This document shows positions 3,205 to 64,000 of a stretch of 64,000 nucleotides of DNA, one piece after another. Location: IMG/VR virus record IMGVR_UViG_3300026292_000003, positions 1 to 64,000 of that record. One strand, given 5' to 3'. How positions within the stretch are numbered: the first letter of the stretch is position 1; each line of letters opens with the position of its first letter. Below the pieces are notes generated by a model. It made no database searches. It worked only from the letters and a program-made list of their open reading frames with translations, and had not been told where the DNA came from. Position numbers and translations under genes: made by a program.

Positions 3205-3210
3205 CTTTAT

Positions 3211-3229
3211 ACTCCTTTATTAAGCAAGT
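3211..3229 (-). promoter_or_regulatory. ROSE-like RNA thermometer hairpin over the hsp20 Shine-Dalgarno
   Basis: ACUUGCUU-AAUA-AAGGAGU: UUGCU with a bulged G paired to AGGA. Confidence 0.65.
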
Positions 3230-3500
3230 TAATTGTTATTAGTAGACCCTAATGGCATCTACAGTATTATTTATCATAACACTATATATAATATAAGCAT
3301 TATTTACAAAAAGTCAAGGGCCAATTTGAATCTTTTTTTAACGTGACCCTACTATATGTGCCTGTAGATACTATGGCACTATACGTATTCGAATCTTTAC
3401 AAAGTTTACAATAGATGGTTGGAAAAATTTTTTAAGCTGACCTTCGGTGAGTCTAGAGGGGTTATGGACACGCAATCCACCCCCTCTAAAATAAATTTAA

Positions 3501-21100: not shown

Positions 21101-24100
21101 AAGTGTTCCTGTAGCAATACCTGCTATTGAGTTAAAGTCTGTATTACCAAGTGTTAATGATTGTCCTGTAGATGTTATTTTAATTCTGTTTGCATCTGCT
21201 GTAATTGTTACTTCAGTATTGTTTGCAGATGTTAATGCAGATTGTATTTGACTAATAGCTGAATTCATTCTAGTAGTTACATTTACACTACTTGTTGTTG
21301 CTGTATAAGACTCATTTAATCCAACTGTAGTTCTAGCAGTACCTGCAACTGACATTGTTGTGTTAGTACTTGTTAGTTTTAATTGACTATTCTCATCTGA
21401 AGCTGTTACTGAAAATAAGTTTGAAGTATCATTAATTTGAGAAACTATATCAGATAAGTTTAATGCAACAGATTGTTGTTGTACTTCTGTAGGAGGTGCA
21501 GTAACTTTTCCACTTGCTGGAAATCCTAAATCAGTATTAGTAGCACCTGCGGACAATGTTAATGTTTCATTAGGATCTGTTGTTGTAAATGTAAGTTCTA
21601 ATAAGTTTGCAGTAGTAACTATACTTGCTGTTAATCCTGTAATACTTGCATTATTAATTGCGTTCATAATTTCAGTAGTCGTCATTTGATCTGGAATATG
21701 TGTTAGTGTTATTGCTACTGCGGCATTCTGCGTTGGTTGTGCATTAAGAGTTAATACTTGACCATTAATAGTCCAACCAGTTTCAAGTACACCGTCTATA
21801 GTTACACTTGCAACACTATAAGTACTATTTGATAATGCTTGTGATATTGTATAAGCTGTCTTAATGAGAGGTTGATGAGTCAGTGTAATATCAACTGCCT
21901 CACCACCTGTCATTGTTGGATTGTTAATTGTAACAACCTGTCCATTCAGAACATAGTCTGAAGTTGGTACGATGGTACTGTCTACTTCCACTTTAAGAAC
22001 ACTCCAGGTACTCGGACTTAAACTTTGATTAATTGTAAAATCTGTTTGACTTGCTGTAGCTGTATTAGTTTCTGTTATATCAGCTGGTGCAATATTATCT
22101 GCGTTAAATGATTCAGTTACGTCTGCTGGTGTAATATCAAAATTAATTAATGTACCATTAACTGTAATTTGTTTACCAGTTACATCTGCAAAACTAGCAT
22201 TACCAGAAGTAGCTCTCATAACTGCATCACCAGTAACTACTGTAACGTTCTGTGATTTACTAAATCCAATACTTACACCATCAATAATTAATGTCTCACT
22301 TGGTAAGAATGTTGGACTTACTACAGTACCTACTGCTTCTATATCTTGATATTCTGTTGCTGTATCATTAAATGTAACTGTAGTACCTGCAATGTTTGCA
22401 ACTGTTCCATTAGGAAATACTGGGTTAGTTACTGTACCAATCTCTTCTATGTTGGCGGCAACTTCCGTAAGTCCTGTAAAGTTAACACTACATTTCCATA
22501 ACTGTCCTTCATGTCTTACTAGGTCATCTTTCTTATAACTTGTAGTAGAATTCCACGTAGGAATTGTTGCGTATGATTCTGTAGAATCAAAAACATTTAT
22601 TTCAGATGAATTTGATATATAATATTTTGTTTCTGTTGTTAATGTTTCTCCACCAGTTAATATTTCTGATGATGAATCGTCATAGCTTAATGTTTCAAAT
22701 GTTGTTGCTACGTCATTTATAATCTTTTTTGTATCAACTTGAGATAAGTCAATAGATAAAGGTAAGTTTATAATATCACTTGATACTATTTCCATCTCAA
22801 ATGGTTCTTGTAAATTATCATTACCTAATGTTGATTGTCTGAACATATATTGTTCAAATGCTGATAGGCTTGTTGTTCCTCCATCGAGTATAGTTGATCT
22901 ACCAAATCTTTCAATCGCACCTTTGGTACCTTTTTGTTTAATAACACCTTGATGAAAGTTTGTAATAGTATTTTTGTTTAGTCCTAATCCACTTACCCAA
23001 TCTTTATCAATGTTACCTATAGTTAAATCTTTTGATTTAGTAATTGCTGAATTAAATTCATCTACATCAGTTCTATAAATGTCATCAACGGCTTGAACTG
23101 CACTATCAAAGTTTTCAACAATATGATCACCGAACACCAAGTAACCTGGTGCATTCTTTTCACCATTCCATTCTTGTGTACGTTGACCTCTTATTAATAA
23201 TCTTTGTTGTCTTTTATTTTTAACATCGTCATATAAGTCAACACCTAATGCTGTTTTATTTTCAAATATTAATGCGTGTTCAAAATTTGTAGTAGCACTA
23301 GTAATACTTCCAATAAATGCTTGTTCTTTAGTTTCAATAGATACTGTTCCATCTTGTCTGTTTATACTTAAATCGCTATGCTGAATCTTATTACTATACA
23401 TATCAAGTATATTATTGTTATTGTAAATTAATGTGTTATAAGGATATACATATCCACTAGGTGGTGTATACGAAACTCTTCTTCCTATTTGTAATATGTA
23501 AGTATCTTTTTCTTCAGCAGTATTTGTCCAATTAACAAAGTCAGCGGCATTTTGGTCGCCTGCAAATTGTAATGTGTATCCTTTGCTTTCTAAATAGTTC
23601 CAGTAGCCTCTGATGAAATTATACACGTCTTGTATCTTAGAAACTTTAGTATCAAATTCTAATGTGCTAGGTGTTGTTACAAATTTATTATATCTTCTTA
23701 CAGTAGCATTATTAATCGTTTGTAATTCATAGTCATTGCCACCGTTACCTAAATTAGGTTCAAAGAATTTAAATTCTCTTTTATTATCTGATACACCAGA
23801 TACTTTATATGCATCTGCAGTTTTAGTAATAAGTAAAATAGATGCATTAACAAAACTATTAGACTGTCCTTCATACATTGATATATTATAATCACTGCTA
23901 CCAAGTTCAAAGTCACCGTAGTAACTAGTTTCTCCAAATATACTTAAAAGATGTTGACTACTATATCCTTCAAGTTTTTGTAATAGTTTTGTTGTTAAAT
24001 TTTTATATAATTCTTTTTGGTTATTATCTAACTGTTTTCTTTTAAAGTAATTGTGTTGTGCTTGTGATATTCCGTTAGCTACAAATGAAACTTCTTTTAA

Positions 24101-27100
24101 AGATAATTCAATACCAGGTGCTACACTTAAACTAGTACTATAAGAAAGAATTGGTATACCAGTAAAGTGTTTACCTCTGTCTACCATACTCATTGCTGAT
24201 ATTTTTGTAGCTGTTGTTTTAAATCTTGCTGTACCTATTGTACTTTGATTATCGTCTAGTATATAAAACTCTTCTGAGTCTACTAGGTTTGAACTAGTAG
24301 ATACTTTTATTTCATTAACAACTTTATAAGTTTCACCAGGCATAGTAAAACAAGAACTGTTTATATATTTCTTATCATATGATGAAGCATAGTCTCTAAC
24401 TTTTCCTGGTTGGAAATAATCTGACCAAGCTCTAGCTGGATTTAATTTCAACATAGCATTAACAGTCATAGCTTGACCTAATGCAGATTGTCTCCATTCA
24501 ATCTCTACAGGACCCCAATCACCAAACACAAAGTCTTGAGATGCATCAACATTTGTTGGCGTACCTAAAACATTATGTGGACTTTCTAACTGTCCATTAG
24601 GTTTTACAGGACAATTATTTGTAAAGTCCCAATTACGTCTTGCGTATTTTATATCTTGTTTTTTATTTGGATATGCTTGTGGTGCAACTGTACCTACGTT
24701 TAACGCACCTATTAGTGCCGCACGTTTTGTAGCATCTGTCCAACTATAATACGTATCCCACCAAGTAGGTTTAAACGCATAGCCTAGCATATGCCAAGGT
24801 GTTAAGTGTGGCGTAGCAGTACCAAACAACGTCATGTATGCACCTTTATAATGTCCTGGCAGTTTGTTAGTACCAAACTTACCTCCAACACTTAATGAGC
24901 TATAATTCCAAGTAAATGTATCGTTAACATCATAATAGTTTTCAGTATTAAATGATGTCTTTTTATTTTGTATAGCCCACTTCTCATAAAACTTTTCTAA
25001 ATAATTATCAACGGTTGCTAAATCATACCAAGCACTTATATGATGACTTGGCATATAATCAGTAGGAGTTTTATATTTGTCTTTTATAATGCTATCATCT
25101 CTGTACATTAAATCTTGTGTAACTAGTCCAGCATATATTCTTTTTTCTAAATCAAACAATGCCGCGTGTACAGGATCAAAGTTAGCACCACTTACGTTTG
25201 TAATCTGTCCGTTAATTGTATAAGTAGAACCATCGTGTGTATATAATGTTGATCCAACTACTTGAGGTTGCATACCAAAAGCTAGTCCAAGTTTAACCAT
25301 ACTCTGTGGAACAAAGCATTCACTATCCATTTGATTGTAAACTACTTTAAGTATTGGACTTGTATTTAAATTATCAAGTGATGCGTATGTAAGTTTTAAA
25401 TATATAGTATCACCTATAAAATCATAATCAGTATCTTTTAATAATATTCTTTCTACTTGGTTATTGTTACCATCGTTTTCAGTTAGATATACATACAAGT
25501 GATCTCTAATATTTTGATCACCGTGCATATTAAATTTTGTTTTAAAATCATATATTGTAATATTTGATATAGTAAATGTTTCAGTATCATAGCTGTTACT
25601 ATAAACCATATTAGAATCAATATAAAGTTCTGAATCTTTTTTATTTCTAATAACTTCATTAATTGCTGATTCAGTTAAAAGTTTTATACTAGAATTATTT
25701 GCTCCTACTGAATATAATCTTTTAGCCTGTGCTAAAAATCTTTTTCTAAAAGCATACCATTCGTTAGCTTGTTCGTTAAGTGTTGCAGTTATATTTAAAT
25801 TTGTATCTGAGTAGTTTATATCATGCATTATACTAATGTCAGGGTGTATAAACATAGTACCACCATAGTATGGAGTATGTACAATACTAGCATAATTATT
25901 TTCACCAAACATAGTTCCAGAGTAACCTGGATTGACTACAAGTTTATCTAACCAATGATCAATAGTTTCACTCATAGTAAATGTTTTAATACATTCATTA
26001 TTAGCATTATGTTCTAATGTTTCTGGAAAACTAATATTTGTTGTTGGATTAGTTTTATCATTGCTCACCCAGTTAAAGTCAACTAGGTCACCTTTTGTGA
26101 AAGCACTCTCATCTATTACAGTACTTGTAGCACCAACAGTTACTAATGAGTTAGAAACTTTGTTGCCATTTATTGTTACGTCATAAAATAATCTATCCCA
26201 ATTCTCTGAGATTGACATTGAAGCCATTTCATTTGCGTCTGCAAATATACTAAAGTTATCACCGTCACTGTTTGCTCCTGTTACTATTGTAATTTCTGTT
26301 CCGTTTCTAGTAATGGTTATAGCAGGTATTGGATTAGAGCCTGGATTTTCAATATCAACTTGCCCAACTTTAAATGTAATTGTGTAACCTGTTAAGTTAT
26401 TAATTTTAATTGTTTGGTTAACACCTAATAAATGTCTAGTGTTTTTATGTGATTCATTGTAAGTACCGTTGTTGTTACACTTGGCTAATACAAGCATATT
26501 ACCTTTAACTATTACATTATATTCTTCAACTGGTCTCCAATTATCAGTACCAACTGGTATAGTCAATGGCGTATCAGCAATAGTAATCTCATATTGCTTT
26601 TCTTCTCTAGCACTTGTTAATTCTCCCGACGGTCTGTAAAATGTATGTAAGTTATTTTTAATTTTAATATGGTTATAACCTTCTACCATTTTTGAATAAC
26701 TTTGATCTCTAACTGCGTCGTCGTAACTCTTTTTATATTCTTTAGTTAATAAATAATTTTCAAATTCATATTCAGCACCCTTTGGTGTATCTTTGTAACT
26801 TAATATATGTCCAATTTCTGGATCAACAAAAGTACCTGTTCCAACTTTATATCCAAAAATCTTTTCTCCAGCAAATCCTGTGCCGAGGATAGTTTCTAAA
26901 GGAACGCCATAGTAATCATAAAATCTATACAATGGATATTGATTGGTTTTTATTTTTTGTTGAGCTAATGTAATTGTACTATTTGTATAATAAACATCTG
27001 CATAGTTCCAATCTGCGTAAGCTGTACTTGCTACAGATTCAATATTCATTGTATCGTTTTCAGCTAAAGTTTTTACTACTGTAGGTGTTGTTGAAGTTTT

Positions 27101-28606
27101 CTTATAAACTTTAGTATCACTATTATCAACATAAACATAAGTAGATCCTATTGGAAAGTCAGTTAAACTTTCTCCACTAACTACACCATAGTTAACTTTT
27201 CCTATACTGTTTGGAGTAATATGTTTTGCGTGATTCCATAAATCTAATCCAGTATCATATTCTATAATAGGCCTTTGTGCTATTCTATATTCTTTTAAAA
27301 TTTCTGTAAAATCATATGTAGGAATTAGTTCTTCTACTTTATTAATTGTAGCAAAGTTAACCCATCTGTTTCCTCTACTCCAAGCTGTTTGAAATACGTC
27401 TGCTCTGTCAATAACAATGTAATCTTTTTTAGGATAAGGAACACTACCGTGATCCCATTTGTCATTGTCATCATATTGATCTAGTGCATTAATAAGAGCA
27501 AGTTCATCAGCAGTAATACCTGCAACGTTTGCTAGTGTATATACTCCACCACTAAACGTTGCTTCTACTAATTTTTTAATTGAAACATCACCTGTGGTTG
27601 CATCTACTTGAGTAATGTATATAGATTCATTGTCGCCTTGATTTGTATGTATCCAATCACTATTAAACTTTATTAAAGTTCCTGATAAAAACTGTGTAGG
27701 GTTAGACTTAATACCATTAAATTTAAAACCATCAAATATAGGTAATCTATTTGTATCAGCATTGTAAGCATCAATTACTAATTGAGGTGAGAGGTTTCCA
27801 GCATTGTAATAAGTATTATCTATATTTGGAGATACTCTTACTACTTCACTTTTATCCCAAGTACCAGGATTATCTGATGAATGTTTAACAACATTTCCAT
27901 ATACCTTAACACCATTTTCATCTTTATATAATTCTAATTTTGTTTCTGGGTTGGTTGCTGTTACTAGATAAGTTTTATTTTCTATTTCTGCCGCCCAACC
28001 TGTTCCACTAAATTTTATAAGCATTCCAACTTGTAATACAAAAGAATTATTATCGTCAGTTAGTTTATATGCTGGTATACTTTGCATTTCAATTAATGGA
28101 TTTGATGCAACATTTCCATTGTTATTATATGTAGTAACATACTTACTTTCATATACTGGCATCTCTTCTACCCATCTATAGTTTTTGTAGTTTAAAAATT
28201 TATCAACATTAATAGGTGGACTAAAAGTATGTTTACTTGATGAATACGAAGCATTGTAATTATAAGTTTCAAAGTTTTGATTTATTGAATATGCTATATC
28301 ATCAAATGCAATTTTATTAGTTAATTCGTTATTATCTGAATAAGATACAATAGCAGGTTTTAATTGAGTTTTATTTCTAAGGTTAGTATCAATACTAGGA
28401 GTTACATAAGTATCACTTGATACTGAATGCTTTCCATTTTTACTTCCTACGTAACCATTAACTTGGCCTAGAGGTCCTTTAGAAACCATTTGGTCAAGAG
28501 TACTATCTAGCCAACTCTTATTAATGTTTGTTTGAAAAACATTAGGTAAGAAATTACTAGTTTTAATCTTGTTTACCTTATTTGGGCCTGCTTTCTTTTT
28601 AGCCAT
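18107..28606 (-). CDS. giant baseplate wedge/structural protein (3499 aa)
   Basis: Follows gp6; YINEVKPFHTKI wedge motif; WNSTTSYKKDDLVRHEGQLWKC carbohydrate-binding-like module; T/N-rich beta modules. Confidence 0.75.
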   Translation of the reverse strand: MAKKKAGPNKVNKIKTSNFLPNVFQTNINKSWLDSTLDQMVSKGPLGQVNGYVGSKNGKHSVSSDTYVTPSIDTNLRNKTQLKPAIVSYSDNNELTNKIAFDDIAYSINQNFETYNYNASYSSSKHTFSPPINVDKFLNYKNYRWVEEMPVYESKYVTTYNNNGNVASNPLIEMQSIPAYKLTDDNNSFVLQVGMLIKFSGTGWAAEIENKTYLVTATNPETKLELYKDENGVKVYGNVVKHSSDNPGTWDKSEVVRVSPNIDNTYYNAGNLSPQLVIDAYNADTNRLPIFDGFKFNGIKSNPTQFLSGTLIKFNSDWIHTNQGDNESIYITQVDATTGDVSIKKLVEATFSGGVYTLANVAGITADELALINALDQYDDNDKWDHGSVPYPKKDYIVIDRADVFQTAWSRGNRWVNFATINKVEELIPTYDFTEILKEYRIAQRPIIEYDTGLDLWNHAKHITPNSIGKVNYGVVSGESLTDFPIGSTYVYVDNSDTKVYKKTSTTPTVVKTLAENDTMNIESVASTAYADWNYADVYYTNSTITLAQQKIKTNQYPLYRFYDYYGVPLETILGTGFAGEKIFGYKVGTGTFVDPEIGHILSYKDTPKGAEYEFENYLLTKEYKKSYDDAVRDQSYSKMVEGYNHIKIKNNLHTFYRPSGELTSAREEKQYEITIADTPLTIPVGTDNWRPVEEYNVIVKGNMLVLAKCNNNGTYNESHKNTRHLLGVNQTIKINNLTGYTITFKVGQVDIENPGSNPIPAITITRNGTEITIVTGANSDGDNFSIFADANEMASMSISENWDRLFYDVTINGNKVSNSLVTVGATSTVIDESAFTKGDLVDFNWVSNDKTNPTTNISFPETLEHNANNECIKTFTMSETIDHWLDKLVVNPGYSGTMFGENNYASIVHTPYYGGTMFIHPDISIMHDINYSDTNLNITATLNEQANEWYAFRKRFLAQAKRLYSVGANNSSIKLLTESAINEVIRNKKDSELYIDSNMVYSNSYDTETFTISNITIYDFKTKFNMHGDQNIRDHLYVYLTENDGNNNQVERILLKDTDYDFIGDTIYLKLTYASLDNLNTSPILKVVYNQMDSECFVPQSMVKLGLAFGMQPQVVGSTLYTHDGSTYTINGQITNVSGANFDPVHAALFDLEKRIYAGLVTQDLMYRDDSIIKDKYKTPTDYMPSHHISAWYDLATVDNYLEKFYEKWAIQNKKTSFNTENYYDVNDTFTWNYSSLSVGGKFGTNKLPGHYKGAYMTLFGTATPHLTPWHMLGYAFKPTWWDTYYSWTDATKRAALIGALNVGTVAPQAYPNKKQDIKYARRNWDFTNNCPVKPNGQLESPHNVLGTPTNVDASQDFVFGDWGPVEIEWRQSALGQAMTVNAMLKLNPARAWSDYFQPGKVRDYASSYDKKYINSSCFTMPGETYKVVNEIKVSTSSNLVDSEEFYILDDNQSTIGTARFKTTATKISAMSMVDRGKHFTGIPILSYSTSLSVAPGIELSLKEVSFVANGISQAQHNYFKRKQLDNNQKELYKNLTTKLLQKLEGYSSQHLLSIFGETSYYGDFELGSSDYNISMYEGQSNSFVNASILLITKTADAYKVSGVSDNKREFKFFEPNLGNGGNDYELQTINNATVRRYNKFVTTPSTLEFDTKVSKIQDVYNFIRGYWNYLESKGYTLQFAGDQNAADFVNWTNTAEEKDTYILQIGRRVSYTPPSGYVYPYNTLIYNNNNILDMYSNKIQHSDLSINRQDGTVSIETKEQAFIGSITSATTNFEHALIFENKTALGVDLYDDVKNKRQQRLLIRGQRTQEWNGEKNAPGYLVFGDHIVENFDSAVQAVDDIYRTDVDEFNSAITKSKDLTIGNIDKDWVSGLGLNKNTITNFHQGVIKQKGTKGAIERFGRSTILDGGTTSLSAFEQYMFRQSTLGNDNLQEPFEMEIVSSDIINLPLSIDLSQVDTKKIINDVATTFETLSYDDSSSEILTGGETLTTETKYYISNSSEINVFDSTESYATIPTWNSTTSYKKDDLVRHEGQLWKCSVNFTGLTEVAANIEEIGTVTNPVFPNGTVANIAGTTVTFNDTATEYQDIEAVGTVVSPTFLPSETLIIDGVSIGFSKSQNVTVVTGDAVMRATSGNASFADVTGKQITVNGTLINFDITPADVTESFNADNIAPADITETNTATASQTDFTINQSLSPSTWSVLKVEVDSTIVPTSDYVLNGQVVTINNPTMTGGEAVDITLTHQPLIKTAYTISQALSNSTYSVASVTIDGVLETGWTINGQVLTLNAQPTQNAAVAITLTHIPDQMTTTEIMNAINNASITGLTASIVTTANLLELTFTTTDPNETLTLSAGATNTDLGFPASGKVTAPPTEVQQQSVALNLSDIVSQINDTSNLFSVTASDENSQLKLTSTNTTMSVAGTARTTVGLNESYTATTSSVNVTTRMNSAISQIQSALTSANNTEVTITADANRIKITSTGQSLTLGNTDFNSIAGIATGTLEAAEGTVQNTFDINQFGGAPVDPSLDPATFNILITDDSDFEISDVEGINTKFFGYNVLQVIQNHSPLYSKSVDGTHCGICAGTATSDGNDAEVTTNIDHGLQVGDFVMLLNTTTTPNIDGIHKVTKLGTGSNAGRIFYIDEFIKECGNAVSIMPLVTTRFANHTQRDSALTKSHWNLPTGTLVVSSNNGTINGTFVSTTDAVGLTTVRQTIARPSNADVDSIIIYNHKTNQTKVQLEAYDPMRKIIPGIAEQNLDYSGVNDNAIYNLSTDTNRFIEDDNAWGEEQVGTRWWDTSKVRYYDYDQGSISYKKDMWGKLYPGSEIVVWEWIKSTVAPDDYAESVTSQKEMFGVTATGEAYSVYDATARETLYYYSQEQEYNSNTGTYTDVFYYWVKNKTTINGTRTLSAFDVANIIENPTANGISWFAVLDNETFIIDNVSYYVEDTSTVLQINLVGDKFKSHNEWTLITKDLDTIPEYYIEGMKYNLAGWDKSLRKIPHQTLHRFNKYGDELSIGQTWFNNLTTARRNAIITINKLLEDINLHDEYKDSWNKTLLANSFPRYLWNWKDYTLNTYLGTLNYTATVTDTDKLETDIDKDFHSVVQLPIYDSALKLDRSEIYYYNSDTAKWILVHKKNSTVRFDVDLLSPSDGFDMTPWDSKGWDHTFVSEYWQVLIEALKKDIFVEYHKLKMNKLFFSIVDYTLSSFAQTNWIRKTTYVKIEVDSQIDTTSRTFKKDNLVNAIGYINEVKPFHTKISAVKTNYKVIDETSITVTDTPTHVITLNTQDFTPTFNGTTYVGADSTDIVTGGDFTSTPADTIEAINFLSPYNFNVNADEKRNSFVNIDPLELLRINVQTNATGNTYANTSRTFTHIQDAAGNVKAYALLDAKKSTLTSAIDEDSTDLAIASTTAFDDTGFVYVGGEIIEYAKTDATTLKIMKRAVGQTFIVSADTGDAVVQISNYQLTFANDTVSYNQTGSSLLSTPVSETAQELQDFGKGIEL

Positions 28607-56950: not shown

Positions 56951-57025
56951 ATCAGCTTGGTGCTAATGGTAACATAGCGGTCTCCAAAACCGAAGACGAG
57001 GGTTCGATTCCTTCAGCTGGTGCCA
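56951..57025 (+). tRNA. trnW: tRNA-Trp (anticodon CCA)
   Basis: Acceptor ATCAGCT/AGCTGGT, anticodon loop CTCCAAA, GGTTCGATTCC T arm, encoded CCA end. Confidence 0.92.
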
Positions 57026-57246: not shown

Positions 57247-58152
57247 ATGTTTAGAGGAAAATACACACAAACACACAGTCATTTCTATATGCTTTCCGAT
57301 ACTCACAGAGTAAACGGATTTATTAATGCAATTAGAGAAAGAGTTTGTGTTGGCGATATTGTTGTTGATTTAGGTGCAGGTACAGGTATACTAGGTATTG
57401 AATGTGCTAAAGCAGGTGCAGATACAGTACATTTAGTAGAACAAGAACCTAAACTAATTCCAGTAATAGAAGCAATGATAAAAGAACACGGTGTTGAAGA
57501 ACAATGTGTTATACATAATAAAAGATCAGATGAATTTATAAAAGAGTTTAAGGGGCAAGTTAATCTAATAGTTTGTGAAGGTATTGGAGATCATATATTT
57601 GAAAGCAGACTAATAAAAGATTTTTTAGAATTCAAAGATAAACACAACATAGATAGTATTCCAGAAGATTTTAGACTTTACGTACATCATACACCTGTAA
57701 AAATAAACAGAGAATTACTTGGCAAGTATCATACAGTACTAGACAAGTTAGAAAAACCAACACTAGATTCTGTTAATATAACAAATAATATTATACATGA
57801 TAGGTTATACAAGTTTGGAAATAAAATAACTGAAGCAAAATGTATTTTAGAGTTTAATTCATTAGATCAACTTAAAACACGTTGTGAACAGATTTCATTA
57901 AACAGAATGCCAGATGATGATGAATATTTAATTCTATATTTTGAAATTGACTTAATAGATAAAATAAATATTAGTAATAAACCTACAAGAGAAGATTTAC
58001 CACATAGCTATTACCAAAGATTAATTAGCTGTAAAGATATAAGATCTCAGAATATACAAATAAAAATTGATTATGAAAAACACGTTACAGGAATCGAAGA
58101 CGAGCCCTTTCCAAATATAGAGATAAAACCAAGCAATGTCCAAATTTTATAA
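57247..58152 (+). CDS. SAM-dependent methyltransferase, protein-arginine methyltransferase (PRMT)-like
   Basis: HxxMLxDxxR; VVDLGAGTGILG..AKAGA..V..VE; double-E loop CEGIGDHIFES. Confidence 0.75.
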   Translation: MFRGKYTQTHSHFYMLSDTHRVNGFINAIRERVCVGDIVVDLGAGTGILGIECAKAGADTVHLVEQEPKLIPVIEAMIKEHGVEEQCVIHNKRSDEFIKEFKGQVNLIVCEGIGDHIFESRLIKDFLEFKDKHNIDSIPEDFRLYVHHTPVKINRELLGKYHTVLDKLEKPTLDSVNITNNIIHDRLYKFGNKITEAKCILEFNSLDQLKTRCEQISLNRMPDDDEYLILYFEIDLIDKINISNKPTREDLPHSYYQRLISCKDIRSQNIQIKIDYEKHVTGIEDEPFPNIEIKPSNVQIL

Positions 58153-59116
58153 CGAAGATTTATACGAGTCAATAGAACATCCAGACTTTTTTAATGCAGA
58201 ACAATTACTCTTTATTAAAAATGGTTATAAAAGTTTATATAACGATGTAATAAAAGATATAGAATATAACGATGATACTGAGTATGTAAGAATTGAAGAA
58301 GCGAACTTTACAAGATCACCAATTAATAAAAGATTAAATTGGGGACAAATTGGAGCATCGGTTCGTGATAAAGAATCGCATGATAGCAAAAGATTTAAAC
58401 AATTATCTTTTCAAAGAAACAAACCAGGCTTTGAGTTTGTTGACAACTTAAATGAATGGACTAGTACCATTGTTAGTATAATGGAAAAAAGATTTGAAGA
58501 AATAGGAAGACCTGCAAAAGTTATGGATATTGCATTTCATAATTTTAGTCAAGGTTTACGAATACATTGTGATGGACAAGATATTTTAACTGAACTAAAA
58601 AATTCAGTTCCAAGACCAGCACATCATCCAAATTATGCAATAGAAGAATATGCACCAAAAGAAGGTGGAACAAAACACGCCCATCAAGGATTAGTTAATT
58701 TAGATGCACAACCAGGAAAAGCAACAATTATTTTTGATCAATGGTTTCCATACAGTACATATTATGATATTACAAATGATTTAGATAATTTAGATGAAGC
58801 AAAAAGACCAGTTATAACATTTGCCAAAGGTGATGATTTTGAAATGTTTGGTGAGCATATAAGAGAGCTAACAGGTAAACCTTTTAACAGGCGTACTTGG
58901 ATGCAACTAATCGCACCAGAATTTCATTTACAATTTCCACCAGAAATGTTTCATGGATTGACACTTAATAAAGTATTAGATTTTGGGGAACCAGGACAAT
59001 TAATATCTTGGGATAATAAACGATACCATATGGCAAAACCTTTTATGTTATGGGGAAACCATGGTATAGGACAAGAAGATAGACTAATGTTACAATACGA
59101 AAGTTTATGTTTGTAG
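58136..59116 (+). CDS. 2OG-Fe(II) oxygenase-like protein
   Basis: IHCD (HxD) ... GQLISWD..RYH ... DRLML (distal His and Arg). Confidence 0.6.
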   Translation: MSKFYNEDLYESIEHPDFFNAEQLLFIKNGYKSLYNDVIKDIEYNDDTEYVRIEEANFTRSPINKRLNWGQIGASVRDKESHDSKRFKQLSFQRNKPGFEFVDNLNEWTSTIVSIMEKRFEEIGRPAKVMDIAFHNFSQGLRIHCDGQDILTELKNSVPRPAHHPNYAIEEYAPKEGGTKHAHQGLVNLDAQPGKATIIFDQWFPYSTYYDITNDLDNLDEAKRPVITFAKGDDFEMFGEHIRELTGKPFNRRTWMQLIAPEFHLQFPPEMFHGLTLNKVLDFGEPGQLISWDNKRYHMAKPFMLWGNHGIGQEDRLMLQYESLCL

Positions 59117-59152
59117 TTAAATAAGGTAAATAATTTAGTAAATAATAGTACA

Positions 59153-59204
59153 ATCGTTCATCCTGTAGATTTCGGACGGAAGTAAGCGAAAGCTGAAGGA
59201 ACGC
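59153..59204 (+). ncRNA. glutamine riboswitch (glnA motif) aptamer 1
   Basis: AUCGUUCA-UCC..GGA-CGGAAGUA-AGC GAAA GCU-GAAGGAACGC matches the glnA three-way junction with E-loop. Confidence 0.85.
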
Positions 59205-59210
59205 ATTATC

Positions 59211-59259
59211 ATCGTTCATCTCGTAAGAGACGGAAGTAGGTAATGAACCGAAGGAACGC
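59211..59259 (+). ncRNA. glutamine riboswitch (glnA motif) aptamer 2
   Basis: AUCGUUCA-UCUC GUAA GAGA-CGGAAGUA-GGU..ACC-GAAGGAACGC. Confidence 0.85.
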
Positions 59260-59284
59260 ACTTAACTGTAAAAAGGAGAGTGTC

Positions 59285-59437
59285 ATGAATCACAGAGACT
59301 TTGAAATCGCTCGTAAAAAGAAGCGAACTGAAGAGGCACACAAAGCAATACATAGAAAGCAAATGGAAAGACCGCTATCTAGACCTCGTGCTGAGAAGAA
59401 CATCTTAAGCTCAGACCCTAAAATGCAAAAAATCTAA
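59285..59437 (+). CDS. small basic protein (50 aa) downstream of the tandem glutamine riboswitch
   Basis: AAGGAGAG RBS and ATG 59285; MNHRDFEIARKKKRTEEAHKAIHRKQMERPLSRPRAEKNILSSDPKMQKI. Confidence 0.75.
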   Translation: MNHRDFEIARKKKRTEEAHKAIHRKQMERPLSRPRAEKNILSSDPKMQKI

Positions 59438-59456
59438 TATTTTTGGTAAAAAAAGG

Positions 59457-59485
59457 TTGACCTTTAGGTAAAGTTAGTATATATT
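59457..59485 (+). promoter_or_regulatory. sigma70 promoter for the ncRNA
   Basis: TTGACC-17nt-TATATT. Confidence 0.7.
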
Positions 59486-59490
59486 ATAGA

Positions 59491-59708
59491 TAATACCAAC
59501 AGCGGATTGATCATCCAATGTTAATAGTGCAAGGAAGAGGCGTTTACCAGAGCGTCGAACTTGACTGTAAAGAGGTGGTACTCAGGCATGGTTGCAGAAA
59601 TGCGTTGTGTCACATCGCTCTACCGAGCGGTTGCAGGTTCCCTGGGTTAGAAATGGTATCTAGTCGAGGGGTTGAGGGTGTACCCAAGTCCCTCCTATTT
59701 TGGTATTA
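59491..59708 (+). ncRNA. ~220-nt structured ncRNA, manA-motif-like
   Basis: Promoter, paired ends TAATACCAA/TTGGTATTA, internal stems and terminator; GTGCAAGGAA..AGAGGTGGTRCTC..CTCTACC blocks recall the marine phage manA RNA (from memory). Confidence 0.65.
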
Positions 59709-59713
59709 GTATT

Positions 59714-59741
59714 AAAACCCACATTAATTGTGGGTTTTTTT
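59714..59741 (+). terminator. intrinsic terminator
   Basis: AAAACCCACA-TTAAT-TGTGGGTTTTTTT. Confidence 0.85.
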
Positions 59742-59844
59742 ATGGCCATACGTTAAAACGCAATCTAACATAGCAAAATGCATAAATACATATATAATTT
59801 TAACTAATTAAAATATGGAAGTAGAAAAATAGGAACAGTATATT

Positions 59845-60450
59845 ATGTCATCACATATTAATCCAGACGCAGGGCGTCTAATTATAGAAAGTACACAAAA
59901 TCTAGACTTGACTGCAAGTCAAGCTAATATGCCTACAGGCGCATCTTTGTATAACAAAGGTGGAATGTTTAATGCTGGGCACCTGTACGTTCAAGGGACC
60001 CTTGTTGTTAATGGTGATATTATTACTTTAGGTAACAGTGGTGGGTCACTTACCTTGAACAGTAATATTAGTAGTGATGTATTACCAGATACAACTTCAG
60101 GTATTCAATACAACATTGGTAGTACAACCAAACCTTGGAATATTGGGTATTTTGAAAAAATAGTATCAAGTCAGAATCCAGCAACAGCAACAACAGATGT
60201 ACCATCAACAAAAGGAACAGTTCTTTTAGATGGTTCAACAAATACATCTTTAGCACTAGCCAATGGAACTGTAGGTGAACGTAAAACAATTATAGTCACA
60301 GCAACTCCATCAGGTACAATCACAGTTACTCCAGCAACAGCATTAGGATATACTAGTATATCATTTGCGGCCGTTGGCGATACTACTGAATTAGTTTACA
60401 CATCAAACGGCTGGTCTATTCTATCTATCTTCCGTGCAAACGTTACGTAA
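59845..60450 (+). CDS. virion structural/fibre-associated protein
   Basis: T/S/G-rich beta protein; late promoter CATAAATA at about 59781. Confidence 0.65.
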   Translation: MSSHINPDAGRLIIESTQNLDLTASQANMPTGASLYNKGGMFNAGHLYVQGTLVVNGDIITLGNSGGSLTLNSNISSDVLPDTTSGIQYNIGSTTKPWNIGYFEKIVSSQNPATATTDVPSTKGTVLLDGSTNTSLALANGTVGERKTIIVTATPSGTITVTPATALGYTSISFAAVGDTTELVYTSNGWSILSIFRANVT

Positions 60451-60510
60451 GCAATTTTAATACGTTAATACAAAAACGCAAGAGCGGCGAGATTGTGAGG
60501 AATAAGAATA

Positions 60511-63500
60511 GTGGCTATTAATATAAACCATAGCATTGGAAAACTTAAATCAGATGACGAGTTAATTCTTGACGCAGGTGTAGGAAAAAATATTGATGTA
60601 TCTACAAAAATAATAAAAAATGCATCTGATCCAGTTGATCCTCAAGATTTAGTTACAAAAGCCTTCCTCGACGCAACCCTTGCAAATTTTGATTCAAGCC
60701 AAGATTCAGAAATTACAGCAGACCTTACTGATGTTTATGAAACAATAGAAAACGTAAGAAACAATACATATGTCAAATCAGTTGATTTTGTTTCAGATAT
60801 TACTTCTGGTGGTGCAGGTTTAACTGCAACACTTAATATTACAACTGAAGGAAATCCAAATAGATATACTATTTCTTGGGGTGACGGAGATGTTACTACA
60901 GCTACAACTGATAGTACTCCAACTCACACATATGCTGATAGTTCTGGTTCTCCATTTGACGTACAAGTTACAGCATTTAATAATCAAGGTACAGGTGCTG
61001 GTAGCACACAATCAAAAACAAGAGAAGATTATATTTCGATATTTACCGCCAACCCAGTAGTTAGCTTCGTCGCATATGACGCACTAACAGGCGGTTCACA
61101 GGTTACCACCTGGAATGACGGTGATACTGTCTACTTCCAAAATACAACAACGAACACAGCCGGAGCAACAGTCCAATACACTTGGAATTGGGGCGATGGT
61201 ACTGCGGACGATGTTATATCTGACAACTCCGTTTCAGGTGGTAGTGCTGGGCCGAGGATAGCTCACACGTTCTCGGCCAGCACACTCACAGACGTTACTC
61301 GTACAGTATCATTGACACTTGATGCACACGATACAATGACACAAAGTCTATTACCATTAAGTGGTAGTGACTTGTTTAAAATTTATGATACACATACACC
61401 AGATACAACTTCAGATATTACAACAGGTATTAATGAAGAATCATCTAATGGATTAGATGTTACCTTTACAAATAATACTGAAGCTACAGTAGGAAGTTAT
61501 GCAGATTATGGAATAACTTACAGATGGGATTTTGGTGATGGAACAATACAAACAGTCAATGTAGGTTCAGGTCAAGCAGGAGATACAGGTAGTACGATAA
61601 CACACAAATATACATTACCTACAAATAATGCACCTCAAGATTATACAGGTAATTTACAAGTAATAAGTGGACATACAAGTAGTCCATTTACAAGTTCATC
61701 TTTTACTATACACGTTGAACCAGATGTTAGAGCTAACATTTCAGGAACAGCAGTACATACATCAGATAGAAGTGGAGATAACCAGTTTGATGTTTATGAT
61801 GGGTTTGATTACTTAGGTAACAATAGAGCAATAGTAGAAGTAACAGATACTTCAGAAAATAAAGATAGTGCTGAGTTTGACTGGAATGATGGAAGTACAA
61901 ACGATACAACAACTACAGAAACACTTGTACAACACGACTTCTCAGGCAAAGCACCTGGCAATTATCAATTAGATTATACAGCTAGTGGTACACCAGATAT
62001 CACAGCTCAAACAGATACACAGAATTTAACTTTCCAAGTTAATGCAGTTCCTACTGCTCCAGATGGACTTGGAAATAAAACAATTTCACTAGTAGATCCT
62101 GCACAAGGTACAGATCCAAAATTAGCATATAATTTCACAGACAATAGTGCAACATCACCATTAACAGCAGGTGACGATTTGGATACAACTACTGCAAGGA
62201 GATATACAGGTGGAACACTTGACACGACAATAGCAGAGAATGCATACGATGGACTATCGGGAACTGTAACTGCAATAGTTAATGGTACCCCGAGTGGATC
62301 AAAAACCTTTTCTACTTCCCTCAACGAAACTGGTACATTTAATGATTTAGTGATCACTCAACAAGATGATGCTCACAATACAATAAGTGCTTCGACATAC
62401 CCAACTGGTTTCTACCAAACATTTGATTCAAAAATTTCTAAACCATTTGCAGAGTATGCTATTGGTGTTAATGATCAGAGAATAGAACATAGTACAACAG
62501 GTGAAACAAATTACGTAACTGTTATGTGTGATGACCTAACAGACGTACCTACACTTGATGATACTAGTTCTATTCTTTCTGAGAGTGTTTCAGGAAATTA
62601 CAGATACATATCAGGTATACCATACTATAATACAGGAAATCCAAAATTAACTTTATCAGGATTAAGTGTAACAAATTGGATAGGACAAGCATATAGAGAT
62701 ACTAGTAATGTTTTAGAATTTAGTAATGGTACTAATTCAGAAGGTACTACAGGCGGAACAATTCAAACACAATTTGCAAGTTATGCAGATTTAGAAGATG
62801 CTACATATCTAGTAAATGGTGTACCAACAGCTAATACATTAAGTTATTCATTTGCTGATCAAACTATTGATATTACACAATCAAACATAGCGGCAGTTGA
62901 AACTATCAAAGCTAGAATTAAGAATGTTAATGGATCAAGTAGCTATAAAGAATTTAATACAAAAGTACAAGTACACAGATCTAATCCAACAGGTGTAATA
63001 GAAGATAGTATACCTGTAGCAGGTAGTTTAGGTAATGGAGCAATAACAGACAATGCAATACGTATAGCAGATTTTGTTTCAGATGGTACAGACAACCCAA
63101 CAATAGTAGGTGCAACAGATTATACAGCTACACCATTTACAGGTGCAGTAAGTGTAAGTGGAACACAAGAAGCAACTGTACGTTGGGGAACATTAGAACA
63201 CAATACAACAGATTATTCAACTGGGTATCTTCCAGTTGGTCCTGATAGAAGTGCAGATACAGGAACACAATATTTTACATTCGCATTCCGTAGACAGGTT
63301 GTAGCTAATTTTAGTATTACAATTAATACAACTGGTATAAGTGGATTGTGGGTAGCGGCACCAGGTACTGCTATTGATTCAGCAAGTGGATTAAATGGTT
63401 GGATAGATGGAACAGCTCAATACGCAGGTGTTGGTGTACCAGGTAGTAATACAGCTTCAGGTGGTAACGGAGGAGACGGTTGTGCGTTAACAGGTGCAGA

Positions 63501-63654
63501 CGTTATTCCAACTAATACAAGTATTAACTCAACTTATACAATGACATTAGGTAGTGAGAATATGAGTAATGCAACTAACAATGTTGTACTAGTTAGAGTA
63601 GCATTAGAAGCAGGAAAACAAATTACTAACTTACAAATAGGGGAGTCTAGCTAA
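60511..63654 (+). CDS. PKD/Ig-domain virion protein (fibre or adhesin)
   Basis: Repeated WGDG/WNWGDG/WDFGDG/WNDG..H.Y PKD motifs; DPVDPQDLVTKAF fibre motif. Confidence 0.8.
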   Translation: MAININHSIGKLKSDDELILDAGVGKNIDVSTKIIKNASDPVDPQDLVTKAFLDATLANFDSSQDSEITADLTDVYETIENVRNNTYVKSVDFVSDITSGGAGLTATLNITTEGNPNRYTISWGDGDVTTATTDSTPTHTYADSSGSPFDVQVTAFNNQGTGAGSTQSKTREDYISIFTANPVVSFVAYDALTGGSQVTTWNDGDTVYFQNTTTNTAGATVQYTWNWGDGTADDVISDNSVSGGSAGPRIAHTFSASTLTDVTRTVSLTLDAHDTMTQSLLPLSGSDLFKIYDTHTPDTTSDITTGINEESSNGLDVTFTNNTEATVGSYADYGITYRWDFGDGTIQTVNVGSGQAGDTGSTITHKYTLPTNNAPQDYTGNLQVISGHTSSPFTSSSFTIHVEPDVRANISGTAVHTSDRSGDNQFDVYDGFDYLGNNRAIVEVTDTSENKDSAEFDWNDGSTNDTTTTETLVQHDFSGKAPGNYQLDYTASGTPDITAQTDTQNLTFQVNAVPTAPDGLGNKTISLVDPAQGTDPKLAYNFTDNSATSPLTAGDDLDTTTARRYTGGTLDTTIAENAYDGLSGTVTAIVNGTPSGSKTFSTSLNETGTFNDLVITQQDDAHNTISASTYPTGFYQTFDSKISKPFAEYAIGVNDQRIEHSTTGETNYVTVMCDDLTDVPTLDDTSSILSESVSGNYRYISGIPYYNTGNPKLTLSGLSVTNWIGQAYRDTSNVLEFSNGTNSEGTTGGTIQTQFASYADLEDATYLVNGVPTANTLSYSFADQTIDITQSNIAAVETIKARIKNVNGSSSYKEFNTKVQVHRSNPTGVIEDSIPVAGSLGNGAITDNAIRIADFVSDGTDNPTIVGATDYTATPFTGAVSVSGTQEATVRWGTLEHNTTDYSTGYLPVGPDRSADTGTQYFTFAFRRQVVANFSITINTTGISGLWVAAPGTAIDSASGLNGWIDGTAQYAGVGVPGSNTASGGNGGDGCALTGADVIPTNTSINSTYTMTLGSENMSNATNNVVLVRVALEAGKQITNLQIGESS

Positions 63655-64000
63655 TGGCAATTAGTGATAATCAAAAAATTGACTACCTATTTAAAAAGAT
63701 TGGTTATGGTGCGACTAAAACAGATACCAATGCTAATAAGTTGGCGGCTAACGAATCAATTCCAAGTCCGTTATTATTACGTGGTGATAAAGTTTGGGCA
63801 GAAGCTGGCAACGTTCCAGCAGTTAAACCAAATGCAGATACAACTGTAGTCAAGTTATATAATGCTGTTGAATGTACAGAAGATATAACGTCAACAGGAA
63901 ATAGAACTTGGAAAACTAATATTACAGATTGGATTACACCAGAGTTTGGTAGTACATATCTAGTAAGTGTTTATATACATGACGCAAATGATTCAGCAGG
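63654..64000 (+). CDS. virion structural protein, truncated by the window end
   Basis: ATG 63654 overlaps the previous stop; MAISDNQKIDYLFKKIGYGATKTD... stays open to the window end. Confidence 0.8.
   Translation, partial: MAISDNQKIDYLFKKIGYGATKTDTNANKLAANESIPSPLLLRGDKVWAEAGNVPAVKPNADTTVVKLYNAVECTEDITSTGNRTWKTNITDWITPEFGSTYLVSVYIHDANDSA

What the first reader, a model, noticed from the sequence alone, without database searches (positions are those of the whole stretch)
59457..59741. Stand-alone ~220-nt structured RNA gene (manA-like) with its own promoter and terminator
Seen: promoter, 9-bp closing stem TAATACCAA/TTGGTATTA, inner helices (GAACTTG 59558-64 / CAGGTTC 59634-40, GCA-GAAA-TGC GNRA hairpin, CGCTC-TACC-GAGCG, GAGGG/CCCTC), a possible GGTAC/GTACC pseudoknot, then a strong terminator. 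It is much more GC-rich than its flanks. It resembles, from memory, the manA RNA motif of marine phages, whose function is unknown. Here a terminator follows directly, which argues for a trans-acting RNA rather than a cis regulator.
Basis: partly seen in the sequence, partly recalled or inferred. Interest (0 to 1): 0.6.

Follow-up and report, generated by a model that had tools for sequence, protein, structure and literature searches.

The report
Stand-alone manA RNA in marine phage
A marine jumbo phage carries a manA-family folded RNA as its own small gene, with a promoter and a terminator, instead of as the leader of a protein gene; it is letter-for-letter conserved between diverged strains, which suggests this orphan RNA family can work on its own.

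Summary
Window 59491-59708 (+) is a manA-family RNA (Rfam RF01745). The Rfam match is full length at 49.3 bits, 6 bits below the curated cut-off (E 1.2e-11). It scores 210 bits against a model built from relatives, and those that pass the cut-off score 57-81 bits.

21 of 46 consensus pairs show compensatory changes. The 63-aa ORF is not conserved.

The arrangement is unusual. Roughly 60-70 relatives, mostly pelagimyophage-like and cyanophage-like contigs, have an ORF start directly downstream of the motif. Only this lineage (the window plus two metagenome contigs) has three features:
- a consensus sigma-70-type promoter ending 6 nt before the outer helix
- an intrinsic terminator 6 nt after the outer helix, with no competing antiterminator
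- a separate late-type promoter motif in front of the next gene, which is probably structural

Between strains that are 83-86% identical in flanking genes, the RNA is 218/218 identical. The promoter hexamers and terminator stem are kept, while the promoter spacer and terminator loop vary.

Metatranscriptome contigs lie on the RNA, but contigs cannot show its ends.

Best reading: a discrete ~250-nt RNA that acts through its fold. A 2026 preprint shows other manA RNAs self-assemble through loop-loop contacts, and the matching loops here are complementary. The function is still unproven.

The parts
59457..59485 (+). Sigma-70-type promoter: -35 TTGACC (59457-62), 17-nt spacer, -10 TATATT (59480-85). 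The predicted start is about 59491-59493, at the base of the outer helix.
   Evidence: 10 of 12; 6 such sites in the window against 0.36 expected; the same TTGACA-17-TATAtT sits at the same distance in the Mosig-like relatives; both hexamers are kept and the spacer has 5 changes in L141 and L156. The start site itself is inferred.
59491..59708 (+). The whole manA-family RNA from the outer helix P0 5' strand (TAATACCAA, 59491-99) to its 3' strand (TTGGTATTA, 59700-08). The Rfam manA match covers 59505-59704.
   Evidence: RF01745, 49.3 bits, positions 1-192 of 192, E 1.2e-11; 210.6 bits against model R1; 21 of 46 pairs compensatory; 218/218 identical in L141 and L156, while flanking genes are 82-86% identical; the longest identical run in the alignment is 59475-59708.
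59504..59516 (+). P1 hairpin (GGAU/AUCC) whose loop UGAUC contains the self-complementary GAUC.
   Evidence: MFE fold; the hairpin is present with different sequences in all subgroups. The alignment in this stretch is poor, so pair counts are weak.
59523..59527 (+). P2 long-range helix, 5' strand AATAG. It pairs with CTATT at 59695-59699.
   Evidence: 4 of the 5 pairs are formed in all 25 distinct relatives (the fifth, 59523-59699, in 11 of 25), with AU/GC and AU/CG/UA covariation. Subgroup versions are GCATTG/CAATGC and GTGTCG/CGACAC.
59530..59563 (+). P3 (CAAG/CTTG) enclosing a hairpin GGCGTTT-ACCA-GAGCGTC. Loop L3 is ACCA (59546-49).
   Evidence: P3 is invariant, and the inner hairpin covaries (for example GC/UG/CG/UA at 59542-59553).
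59565..59636 (+). P4 junction helix CTGTAA (59565-70) / TTGCAG (59631-36), enclosing P5, P6 and P7.
   Evidence: columns 81-86 / 147-152: strong covariation. The window's lineage carries double changes of its own at three of these pairs.
59572..59583 (+). P5 hairpin GAG-GTGGTA-CTC. Loop L5 is GUGGUA.
   Evidence: It is invariant in this data set, partly because the relatives were retrieved with this 16-mer.
59585..59611 (+). P6 hairpin with a G-U-rich outer stem, an inner stem and the GNRA loop GAAA (59597-59600).
   Evidence: the inner pairs covary (GC/CG, CG/UA, AU/UG/GC). The G-U pairs fix the strand as +.
59615..59630 (+). P7 hairpin TCGCTC-TACC-GAGCGG. Loop L7 is UACC, complementary to GGUA of L5.
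   Evidence: covariation GC/AU and CG/AU. L5 with L7 is complementary in 25 of 25 distinct relatives.
59640..59670 (+). P8 long hairpin: outer CCCT/AGGG, inner GGTTAGA/TCTAGTC. Loop L8 is AAUGGUA (59652-58).
   Evidence: this is the variable stem with many compensatory changes; variants in RNA contigs at 59662, 59663 and 59675 keep the pairing.
59674..59694 (+). P9 hairpin GAGGG-TGTACCCAAGT-CCCTC. Loop L9 contains UACC, complementary to GGUA of L8.
   Evidence: covariation AU/GC/UA/GU and GC/AU.
59715..59746 (+). Intrinsic terminator: a 10-bp stem AAAACCCACA / TGTGGGTTTT, loop TTAAT and a run of seven T.
   Evidence: dG -12.9 kcal/mol, pair probability about 1, and no alternative pairing for the 5' arm when the hairpin is forbidden; the stem is kept and the loop changes to ATTT in L141 and L156.
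59781..59790 (+). Late-type promoter motif GCATAAATAC, 56 nt before the next ORF.
   Evidence: ATAAATA is present in 37 of 99 upstream regions of this genome against 1.8 expected; it is kept in relatives while the surrounding spacer varies. Its function as a promoter is inferred.
59845..60450 (+). Next gene, 201 aa, a viral protein of unknown function with weak leads to baseplate or tail-fibre proteins. It is followed by a 1047-aa PKD-domain protein (60511-63654).
   Evidence: 102 nucleotide changes give about 20 amino-acid changes against the relatives, so it is a real gene.
59153..59437 (+). Upstream context: two tandem glutamine riboswitches (59153-59207 and 59211-59262) and a 50-aa basic ORF (59285-59437). 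No terminator lies before the manA promoter, so this transcript probably also runs into manA.
   Evidence: 61.4 and 65.7 bits; the ORF has 4-6 nucleotide changes and 0-1 amino-acid changes, and riboswitch 1 shows a compensatory stem change.

Best explanation
This is a true member of the manA RNA family (RF01745). In this jumbo-phage lineage it has become, or has remained, a small self-contained gene.

Host RNA polymerase would start at a consensus sigma-70-type (early) promoter. The predicted start falls at the base of a 9-bp outer helix. The polymerase would transcribe the nine-helix manA fold and stop at an intrinsic terminator 6 nt after that helix. The product would be an RNA of about 250 nt with both ends base-paired.

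The RNA would then act as a free molecule through its three-dimensional fold, not by gating a downstream ORF. Most plausibly it self-associates through the GGUA/UACC loop pairs L5-L7 and L8-L9, as other manA RNAs do in vitro. Alternatively, or in addition, it binds a ligand or protein.

What is shown:
- family membership by homology
- structure supported by covariation
- conservation of the promoter hexamers, the RNA and the terminator stem
- absence of an antiterminator
- a separate promoter motif for the next gene

What is inferred:
- the transcript's ends
- action in trans
- multimerisation
For: Family and structure:
- Full-length Rfam manA match, E 1.2e-11.
- 210.6 bits against model R1, built from relatives. 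Of the 16 relative loci scanned, 14 pass Rfam's cut-off at 57-81 bits.
- 21 of 46 pairs have compensatory changes, some specific to this lineage.
- Every column that is invariant across the 35 aligned sequences is kept in the window.

Transcription unit:
- The promoter is one of six consensus sites in the window, against 0.36 expected.
- Its position relative to the motif is shared with the Mosig-like relatives.
- The terminator is strong and structurally independent of the fold.
- In L141 and L156 the hexamers and the stem are kept, while the spacer and the loop vary.

Not a leader:
- Of roughly 60-70 relatives, only this lineage has a terminator. All the others have an ORF start downstream: 7-21 nt away in most, up to about 95 nt before gp32, and about 135 nt (L040) or 233 nt (L058) in two of the gp32 contigs.
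- The next gene carries the genome's enriched (G/C)ATAAATAC motif.
- That gene looks structural.

Selection without a cis target:
- The RNA is 218/218 identical, against 82-86% identity in flanking genes. It is the longest identical run in 3.9 kb.
- Even the neighbouring coding ORF and riboswitch 1 show changes.

Expression:
- Contigs from four metatranscriptome runs (three studies) lie on 59512-59750. They include exact 101-nt and 127-nt contigs.

Self-assembly:
- The preprint 10.64898/2026.07.01.735769 reports manA pentamers, decamers and a 60-mer built through L5-L7', L8-L9' and L1-L1' contacts.
- The corresponding loops here are complementary, GGUA:UACC twice.
- The L8-L9 pair differs compensatorily from that of the published manA_A0F1 sequence. 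This was read by eye.
Against: - No transcript ends were observed. Only assembled contigs were available, and these cannot show starts, ends or strand. RNA libraries can also contain DNA.
- One 453-nt contig from an RNA library (59534-59982, a diverged strain) crosses the terminator into the next gene. Read-through is therefore possible.
- Every other known family member sits in front of an ORF, and the family is curated as cis-regulatory (PMC2864571).
- The upstream riboswitch-ORF50 transcript has no terminator of its own. manA may therefore also be its 3' end.
- Perfect identity could partly reflect recent recombination between strains rather than selection alone.
- Multimerisation has been shown only in vitro, at high RNA and Mg concentrations, and for other family members.
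Confidence: 0.55

Rival explanations
1. It is still a cis-acting leader, a riboswitch-like attenuator. The manA fold senses a ligand or protein and sets how often polymerase reads through the terminator into the 201-aa and 1047-aa genes early in infection.
For: All other relatives lie directly 5' of ORFs on the same strand, and the family is curated as a cis-regulatory riboswitch candidate. An aptamer followed by a terminator is the classic transcriptional riboswitch layout. One RNA-library contig spans from manA into the next gene.
Against: No alternative pairing competes with the terminator. When the hairpin is forbidden, its 5' arm simply stays unpaired and the manA fold is unchanged. The terminator starts 6 nt after the outer helix and shares no bases with it. 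A 136-nt spacer with the genome's own promoter motif precedes the ORF. The downstream genes look like late structural genes.
Confidence: 0.2
2. It is the structured 3' end of the upstream early transcript (tandem glutamine riboswitches plus the 50-aa ORF). In that role it would serve as an exonuclease block or a processing site, or it is a stranded remnant of a manA-plus-gene cassette whose gene was lost.
For: There is no terminator between the ORF50 stop (59437) and the manA promoter, so read-in is expected. Relatives show cassette turnover: L040 keeps only a 44-codon stub of the rubrerythrin gene after manA.
Against: The RNA has its own conserved consensus promoter. A remnant would decay, yet it is 218/218 identical between strains, keeps all family-invariant positions and has lineage-specific compensatory pairs. 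A simple 3' stabiliser would not need a nine-helix fold.
Confidence: 0.15
3. The region encodes the 63-aa protein of ORF 59518-59709.
For: An ATG-initiated open frame exists.
Against: The frame is interrupted by 1-4 stops in the 34 aligned relatives. There is no Pfam or PHROG match. The substitutions are pairwise compensatory, not codon-patterned.
Confidence: 0.01

Closest known systems
manA RNA motif (Rfam RF01745; Weinberg et al. 2010, PMC2864571)
   Same: It has the same nine-helix architecture (P1-P9), the same conserved loops (L5 GUGGU, the GNRA loop L6, the ACC-containing L7) and the same long-range helix P2. It is found in marine T4-like phages. The Rfam alignment is full length. It is 74% identical to the copy in Pelagibacter phage Mosig, which passes Rfam's cut-off at 64 bits.
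   Different: It scores 6 bits under the curated cut-off. It has an extra 9-bp outer helix. It is followed by an intrinsic terminator instead of an ORF. It sits in a jumbo phage whose capsid is closest to the PA5oct, Phosso and Vibrio 2.275.O types, not in a cyanophage or pelagimyophage.
manA leaders of pelagimyophage-like contigs (Mosig EXVC030M and about 40 IMG/VR contigs)
   Same: The promoter type and its spacing to the motif are the same in the Mosig-like group. The conserved core is the same.
   Different: There the RNA is the 5' leader of rubrerythrin, peroxiredoxin, gp32, a gp33-like coactivator, 2OG-Fe(II) oxygenase or small unknown genes. In one subgroup it begins within about 12 nt of a phage tmRNA gene. 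None of them has a terminator.
Self-assembling manA RNAs solved by cryo-EM (bioRxiv 10.64898/2026.07.01.735769)
   Same: The helix and loop plan is the same. L5/L7 and L8/L9 are complementary here too, and a GNRA loop L6 is present.
   Different: Those were metagenomic and Photobacterium sequences, transcribed and refolded in vitro. Nothing is known of their behaviour in cells. Assembly of this copy is untested.
ROOL, GOLLD and OLE: large RNA-only multimers, ROOL and GOLLD often phage-borne (PMC12286853)
   Same: These are structured non-coding RNAs of unknown function, carried by phages and expressed as independent RNAs. They form homo-oligomers through loop-loop contacts.
   Different: They are unrelated in sequence and three to four times longer. 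No Rfam match to them was found here.
Transcriptional riboswitches (aptamer plus terminator platform)
   Same: A conserved folded domain transcribed from its own promoter, followed closely by an intrinsic terminator.
   Different: The terminator shares no bases with the fold, there is no antiterminator, no ligand is known, and the next gene has its own promoter motif.

Membership tests
manA RNA (RF01745) | Score at or above Rfam's gathering cut-off (55.2 bits) | tested here: not met
   The score is 49.3 bits with E 1.2e-11 over 601 nt, and all 192 model positions align. It is not listed at gathering threshold. The cut-off is a curation threshold, not a biological feature.
manA RNA (RF01745) | Homology to accepted members | tested here: met
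   210.6 bits against model R1, built from relatives. Of 16 relative loci scanned, 14 pass the cut-off at 57-81 bits, including Mosig at 64.0. Identity to Mosig is 74%.
manA RNA (RF01745) | Conserved helices supported by covariation | tested here: met
   46 consensus pairs, 21 of them with changes on both sides. P2, P4, P6 inner, P7, P8 and P9 were checked pair by pair.
manA RNA (RF01745) | Conserved loop and junction nucleotides (L5 GUGGU, GNRA L6, ACC in L7, GUGUCACA) | tested here: met
   The window is one of the 35 aligned sequences, so every invariant column is kept in it. L5 invariance is partly due to how the relatives were retrieved.
manA RNA (RF01745) | Position in the 5' UTR of a protein gene. 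This is the usual context and the basis of the 'cis-regulatory' label. | tested here: not met
   A terminator starts 6 nt after the fold, and the next ORF is 136 nt away with its own promoter motif. This lowers 'it is a cis-regulatory manA leader', not 'it is a manA RNA'.
Riboswitch with transcription-terminator platform | Mutually exclusive terminator and antiterminator pairings that overlap the aptamer | tested here: not met
   Constrained folding finds no partner for the terminator's 5' arm, and the aptamer fold is unchanged.
Riboswitch with transcription-terminator platform | Specific ligand binding | not testable with these tools
   No ligand is known for the family.
Self-assembling RNA (manA cage or oligomers; ROOL/GOLLD-like) | Complementary loops at the positions that form intermolecular contacts | tested here: met
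   L5 GGUA with L7 UACC, and L8 GGUA with L9 UACC. Loop naming follows the preprint's supplement. Covariation cannot tell intramolecular from intermolecular pairing.
Self-assembling RNA (manA cage or oligomers; ROOL/GOLLD-like) | Formation of defined oligomers | not testable with these tools
   This needs native gels, SEC or cryo-EM of the 59491-59708 transcript.
Independent small RNA gene | Own promoter and own terminator under selection | tested here: met
   The hexamers and the stem are kept while the spacer and the loop vary in two diverged contigs. The promoter pattern is enriched 17-fold over chance.
Independent small RNA gene | A discrete transcript with defined 5' and 3' ends | tested here: inconclusive
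   RNA-library contigs lie on 59512-59750, but contigs cannot show ends. One diverged contig crosses the terminator.

The most novel reading that the evidence does not exclude
manA RNAs are not riboswitches but architectural RNAs. This phage makes the RNA as a free, doubly end-sealed transcript that assembles in the infected cell into pentamer-based particles or cages through L5-L7, L8-L9 and possibly palindromic L1 contacts. The leader copies in other phages would then tether or co-localise their mRNAs to such assemblies. This locus would be the first natural stand-alone manA gene, and the first genomic hint that the cages seen in vitro have a cellular counterpart.
Probability: 0.2. Interest if true: 0.85.

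Novelty: new variant of a known kind. Interest (0 to 1): 0.6.

Why it matters
manA has been an orphan 'riboswitch candidate' since 2010, with no ligand and no tested function. A copy that has no gene to regulate, yet keeps its own promoter and terminator and is the most conserved stretch of its neighbourhood, amounts to a natural separation-of-function experiment. It argues that the fold does something by itself.

Together with the 2026 finding that manA RNAs self-assemble, this gives a concrete, small construct (59491-59708) and clear predictions for transcript mapping, termination assays and oligomerisation tests. It also extends the family from cyanophages and pelagimyophages to a jumbo-phage lineage.

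Tried and rejected
- Protein-coding reading of ORF 59518-59709. Rejected because relatives have stops in that frame and there is no family match.
- Antiterminator search by constrained folding: none found.
- T4-type late promoter TATAAATA: it is depleted in this window, 3 against 15 expected. A k-mer scan of the whole genome instead found (G/C)ATAAATAC.
- Further manA copies in the remaining 158 kb of the genome: none. The 'own genome' family search found no candidates and was uninformative.
- A window-specific 19-mer in viral contigs: no hit.
- A looser two-block pattern in viral contigs added 17 loci, all chance matches. The census therefore remains anchored on the L5 16-mer and is biased towards that variant.
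- blastn of a cyanophage-type manA against isolated phages: no match. Cultured cyanophage contexts were therefore not surveyed.
- Atlas look-ups for the 50-aa and 201-aa proteins gave only weak leads.
- Reads: only Logan contigs were available, so 5' and 3' ends and strand could not be seen.

Full report
**What is there.** The window is the first 64 kb of a 221.6-kb linear IMG/VR virus record, estimated about 60% complete.
- It has a T4-like head and portal module.
- Its major capsid protein is closest (65-70% identity) to jumbo phages such as Sinorhizobium phage Phosso, Vibrio phage 2.275.O and Pseudomonas phage PA5oct.
- At 59457-59746 the sequence reads, in order: a sigma-70-type promoter, a G+C-rich segment and an intrinsic terminator.
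- The segment folds better than any of 200 shuffles, z = -3.75.

**Identity.** At Rfam's gathering thresholds the window gives only two glutamine riboswitches and a tRNA.
- With E-value reporting, 59505-59704 (+) matches manA (RF01745) over all 192 model positions at 49.3 bits, E 1.2e-11. That is 6 bits under the cut-off.
- The only isolate with similar DNA is Pelagibacter phage Mosig, at 74% identity. There the region is unannotated and lies just upstream of a rubrerythrin gene.
- A 16-mer from loop L5 retrieved 67 IMG/VR loci.
- A covariance model built from 35 of them hits 61 of the 67 retrieved loci, plus Mosig, and gives the window 210.6 bits.
- Of 16 relative loci scanned, 14 pass Rfam's manA cut-off at 57-81 bits.
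- The RNA is therefore a manA family member by homology. The sub-threshold score reflects divergence, not a different fold.

**Structure.** RNAalifold on the MAFFT alignment gives 46 pairs, 21 with compensatory changes.
- The long-range helix P2 reads AATAG/CTATT here, GCATTG/CAATGC in one subgroup and GTGTCG/CGACAC in another.
- P4, the inner P6 stem, P7, P8 and P9 also covary.
- Three singleton double changes in P4 belong to the window's own lineage, so structure has been maintained in this lineage too.
- The 9-bp outer stem is real and covaries with ATGC/GCAT in the Mosig-like group. It is absent from the other groups.
- G-U pairs in P6 fix the strand as +.
- The 63-aa ORF is broken by stops in relatives.

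**Context in relatives.** In the IMG/VR census of 58 relatives, and in 13 further metagenome contigs, some of them duplicates, no terminator follows the motif.
- An ORF begins 7-21 nt downstream in most. These include rubrerythrin, peroxiredoxin, 2OG-Fe(II) oxygenase and several small unknown proteins.
- For the gp32 single-strand-binding gene the distance is about 95 nt, with a T4-type TATAAATA between. In two of these contigs it is longer, about 135 nt (L040) and 233 nt (L058).
- The Mosig-like group shares the promoter TTGACA-17-TATAtT, ending 7-10 nt before the motif.
- In another group the motif begins within about 12 nt of the end of a phage-encoded two-piece tmRNA.
- This is the classic 'leader' picture on which the family's cis-regulatory label rests (PMC2864571).

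**What differs here.** Only the window and two syntenic metagenome contigs (L141 and L156) have a terminator directly after the RNA.
- The hairpin (dG -12.9 kcal/mol) forms with probability about 1.
- When it is forbidden, its 5' arm finds no partner and the manA fold is unchanged. There is no antiterminator.
- The 136-nt spacer before the next ORF contains GCATAAATAC. ATAAATA occurs in 37 of 99 upstream regions of this genome against 1.8 expected, and ATAAATAC in 26, so the motif is probably this phage's late promoter.
- T4's TATAAATA is depleted in the window.
- The next genes are a 201-aa viral protein with weak baseplate or tail-fibre leads and a 1047-aa PKD-domain protein, so they are probably structural.
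- The manA promoter is one of six TTGAC-N18-TATAWT sites in the window, against 0.36 expected.

**Conservation.** L141 and L156 align to window 58058-64000.
- Identity is 82-86% in the flanking genes, but 218/218 from the first base of the outer helix to its last.
- The longest identical run in the alignment is 59475-59708, that is, from the -10 box to the end of the RNA.
- The promoter spacer has 5 changes with both hexamers intact.
- The first difference after the RNA is at 59709.
- The terminator stem is intact while its loop changes from TTAAT to ATTT.
- The late-type motif is kept while the surrounding spacer varies.
- At about 15% background divergence, 218 unchanged bases have a chance of order 1e-15 (my calculation).
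- By comparison, the neighbouring 50-aa ORF has 4-6 changes, nearly all synonymous, and riboswitch 1 has a compensatory stem change.
- This is the signature of a promoter, an RNA and a terminator that are each under selection. Recent recombination of a block cannot be fully excluded, but the block is not uniformly identical.

**Expression.** Four metatranscriptome runs from three studies hold contigs on the RNA:
- exact 101-nt (59537-59637) and 127-nt (59512-59638) contigs
- a 163-nt contig with 8 differences
- a 144-nt contig (59608-59750) ending at the terminator's T-run
- a 453-nt contig of a diverged strain (59534-59982) that crosses the terminator

Contigs cannot show ends, strand or level, and DNA carry-over is possible. 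This shows presence in RNA libraries and no more. Three of the four listed variant positions inside P8 and P9 keep the pairing.

**Mechanism.** I commit to a discrete RNA of about 250 nt, sealed at both ends by helices, that acts through its fold.
- A July 2026 preprint (10.64898/2026.07.01.735769) reports that five manA RNAs form pentamer-based octamers or decamers, and one forms a 60-subunit icosahedral cage. The contacts are L5-L7', L8-L9', L3-L8', L6-P6' and L1-L1'.
- With the same helix numbering, the window has L3 ACCA, L5 GUGGUA, L6 GAAA, L7 UACC, L8 AAUGGUA and L9 UGUACCCAAGU.
- L5/L7 and L8/L9 each offer GGUA:UACC.
- Against the published manA_A0F1 sequence, the L8-L9 pairing differs by a U-A to G-C double change. 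This was read by eye.
- L1 contains the palindrome GAUC. This is weak evidence.
- The sequence therefore keeps what self-assembly would need, but assembly of this RNA, in vitro or in cells, is untested.

The rivals are an attenuating leader (0.2), a 3'-end element or remnant of the upstream transcript (0.15) and a small protein (0.01).

**Verdict.** It is a known RNA family in a new, informative arrangement.

Noticed in passing
window 59153-59437: Two tandem glutamine riboswitches (61.4 and 65.7 bits) precede a 50-aa, very basic ORF. The ORF is under purifying selection: 4-6 nucleotide changes give 0-1 amino-acid changes against two relatives. Riboswitch 1 shows a compensatory stem change, AGC/GCU to GGC/GCC. 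This is a glutamine-sensing unit in a jumbo phage. The peptide has no family match.
   Followed up: partly
G000 about 162,260-162,602 (L073:19060-19402) and L072/L074: The phage encodes an alphaproteobacterial-type two-piece (permuted) tmRNA and at least 12 tRNAs besides tRNA-Trp at window 56951-57025. The tmRNA type hints at an alphaproteobacterial host.
   Followed up: no
L002, L011, L012, L016 (for example L011:2879-3169 tmRNA, 3180-3387 manA): In one subgroup of relatives the manA RNA begins about 10-12 nt after a phage tmRNA gene, with no promoter between them. The two RNAs are therefore probably co-transcribed and then processed apart.
   Followed up: partly
whole genome G000; window example 59781-59790: The motif (G/C)ATAAATAC is strongly enriched upstream of genes: ATAAATA is in 37 of 99 upstream regions against 1.8 expected, at a median 32 nt before the start codon. 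T4's TATAAATA is depleted. This is probably the phage's late promoter.
   Followed up: partly
relatives L001, L017, L022, L052, L011, L050, L018: Genes led by manA in relatives are mostly stress or metabolic cassettes: rubrerythrin, peroxiredoxin, 2OG-Fe(II) oxygenases, and a small ORF followed by a short glutamine-synthetase-like gene. L040 keeps only a 44-codon stub of rubrerythrin, so the cassette turns over while manA stays.
   Followed up: partly
L001 (Pelagibacter phage Mosig MT647606, record 108168-108397): The Mosig genome record has no feature annotated over its manA RNA, although the RNA passes Rfam's cut-off at 64 bits.
   Followed up: yes
window 18107-28606 (-): A single 3499-aa ORF lies next to a 1033-aa ORF in the tail and baseplate region. 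It was not examined.
   Followed up: no
L006, L018, L068 and similar: about 10-90 nt after manA: In cyanophage-like relatives the spacer after manA contains a long-range complementarity, CCCTCTTTTT...AAAAAGAGGGG, before the 84-aa ORF. It could be a further structured element and was not analysed.
   Followed up: no
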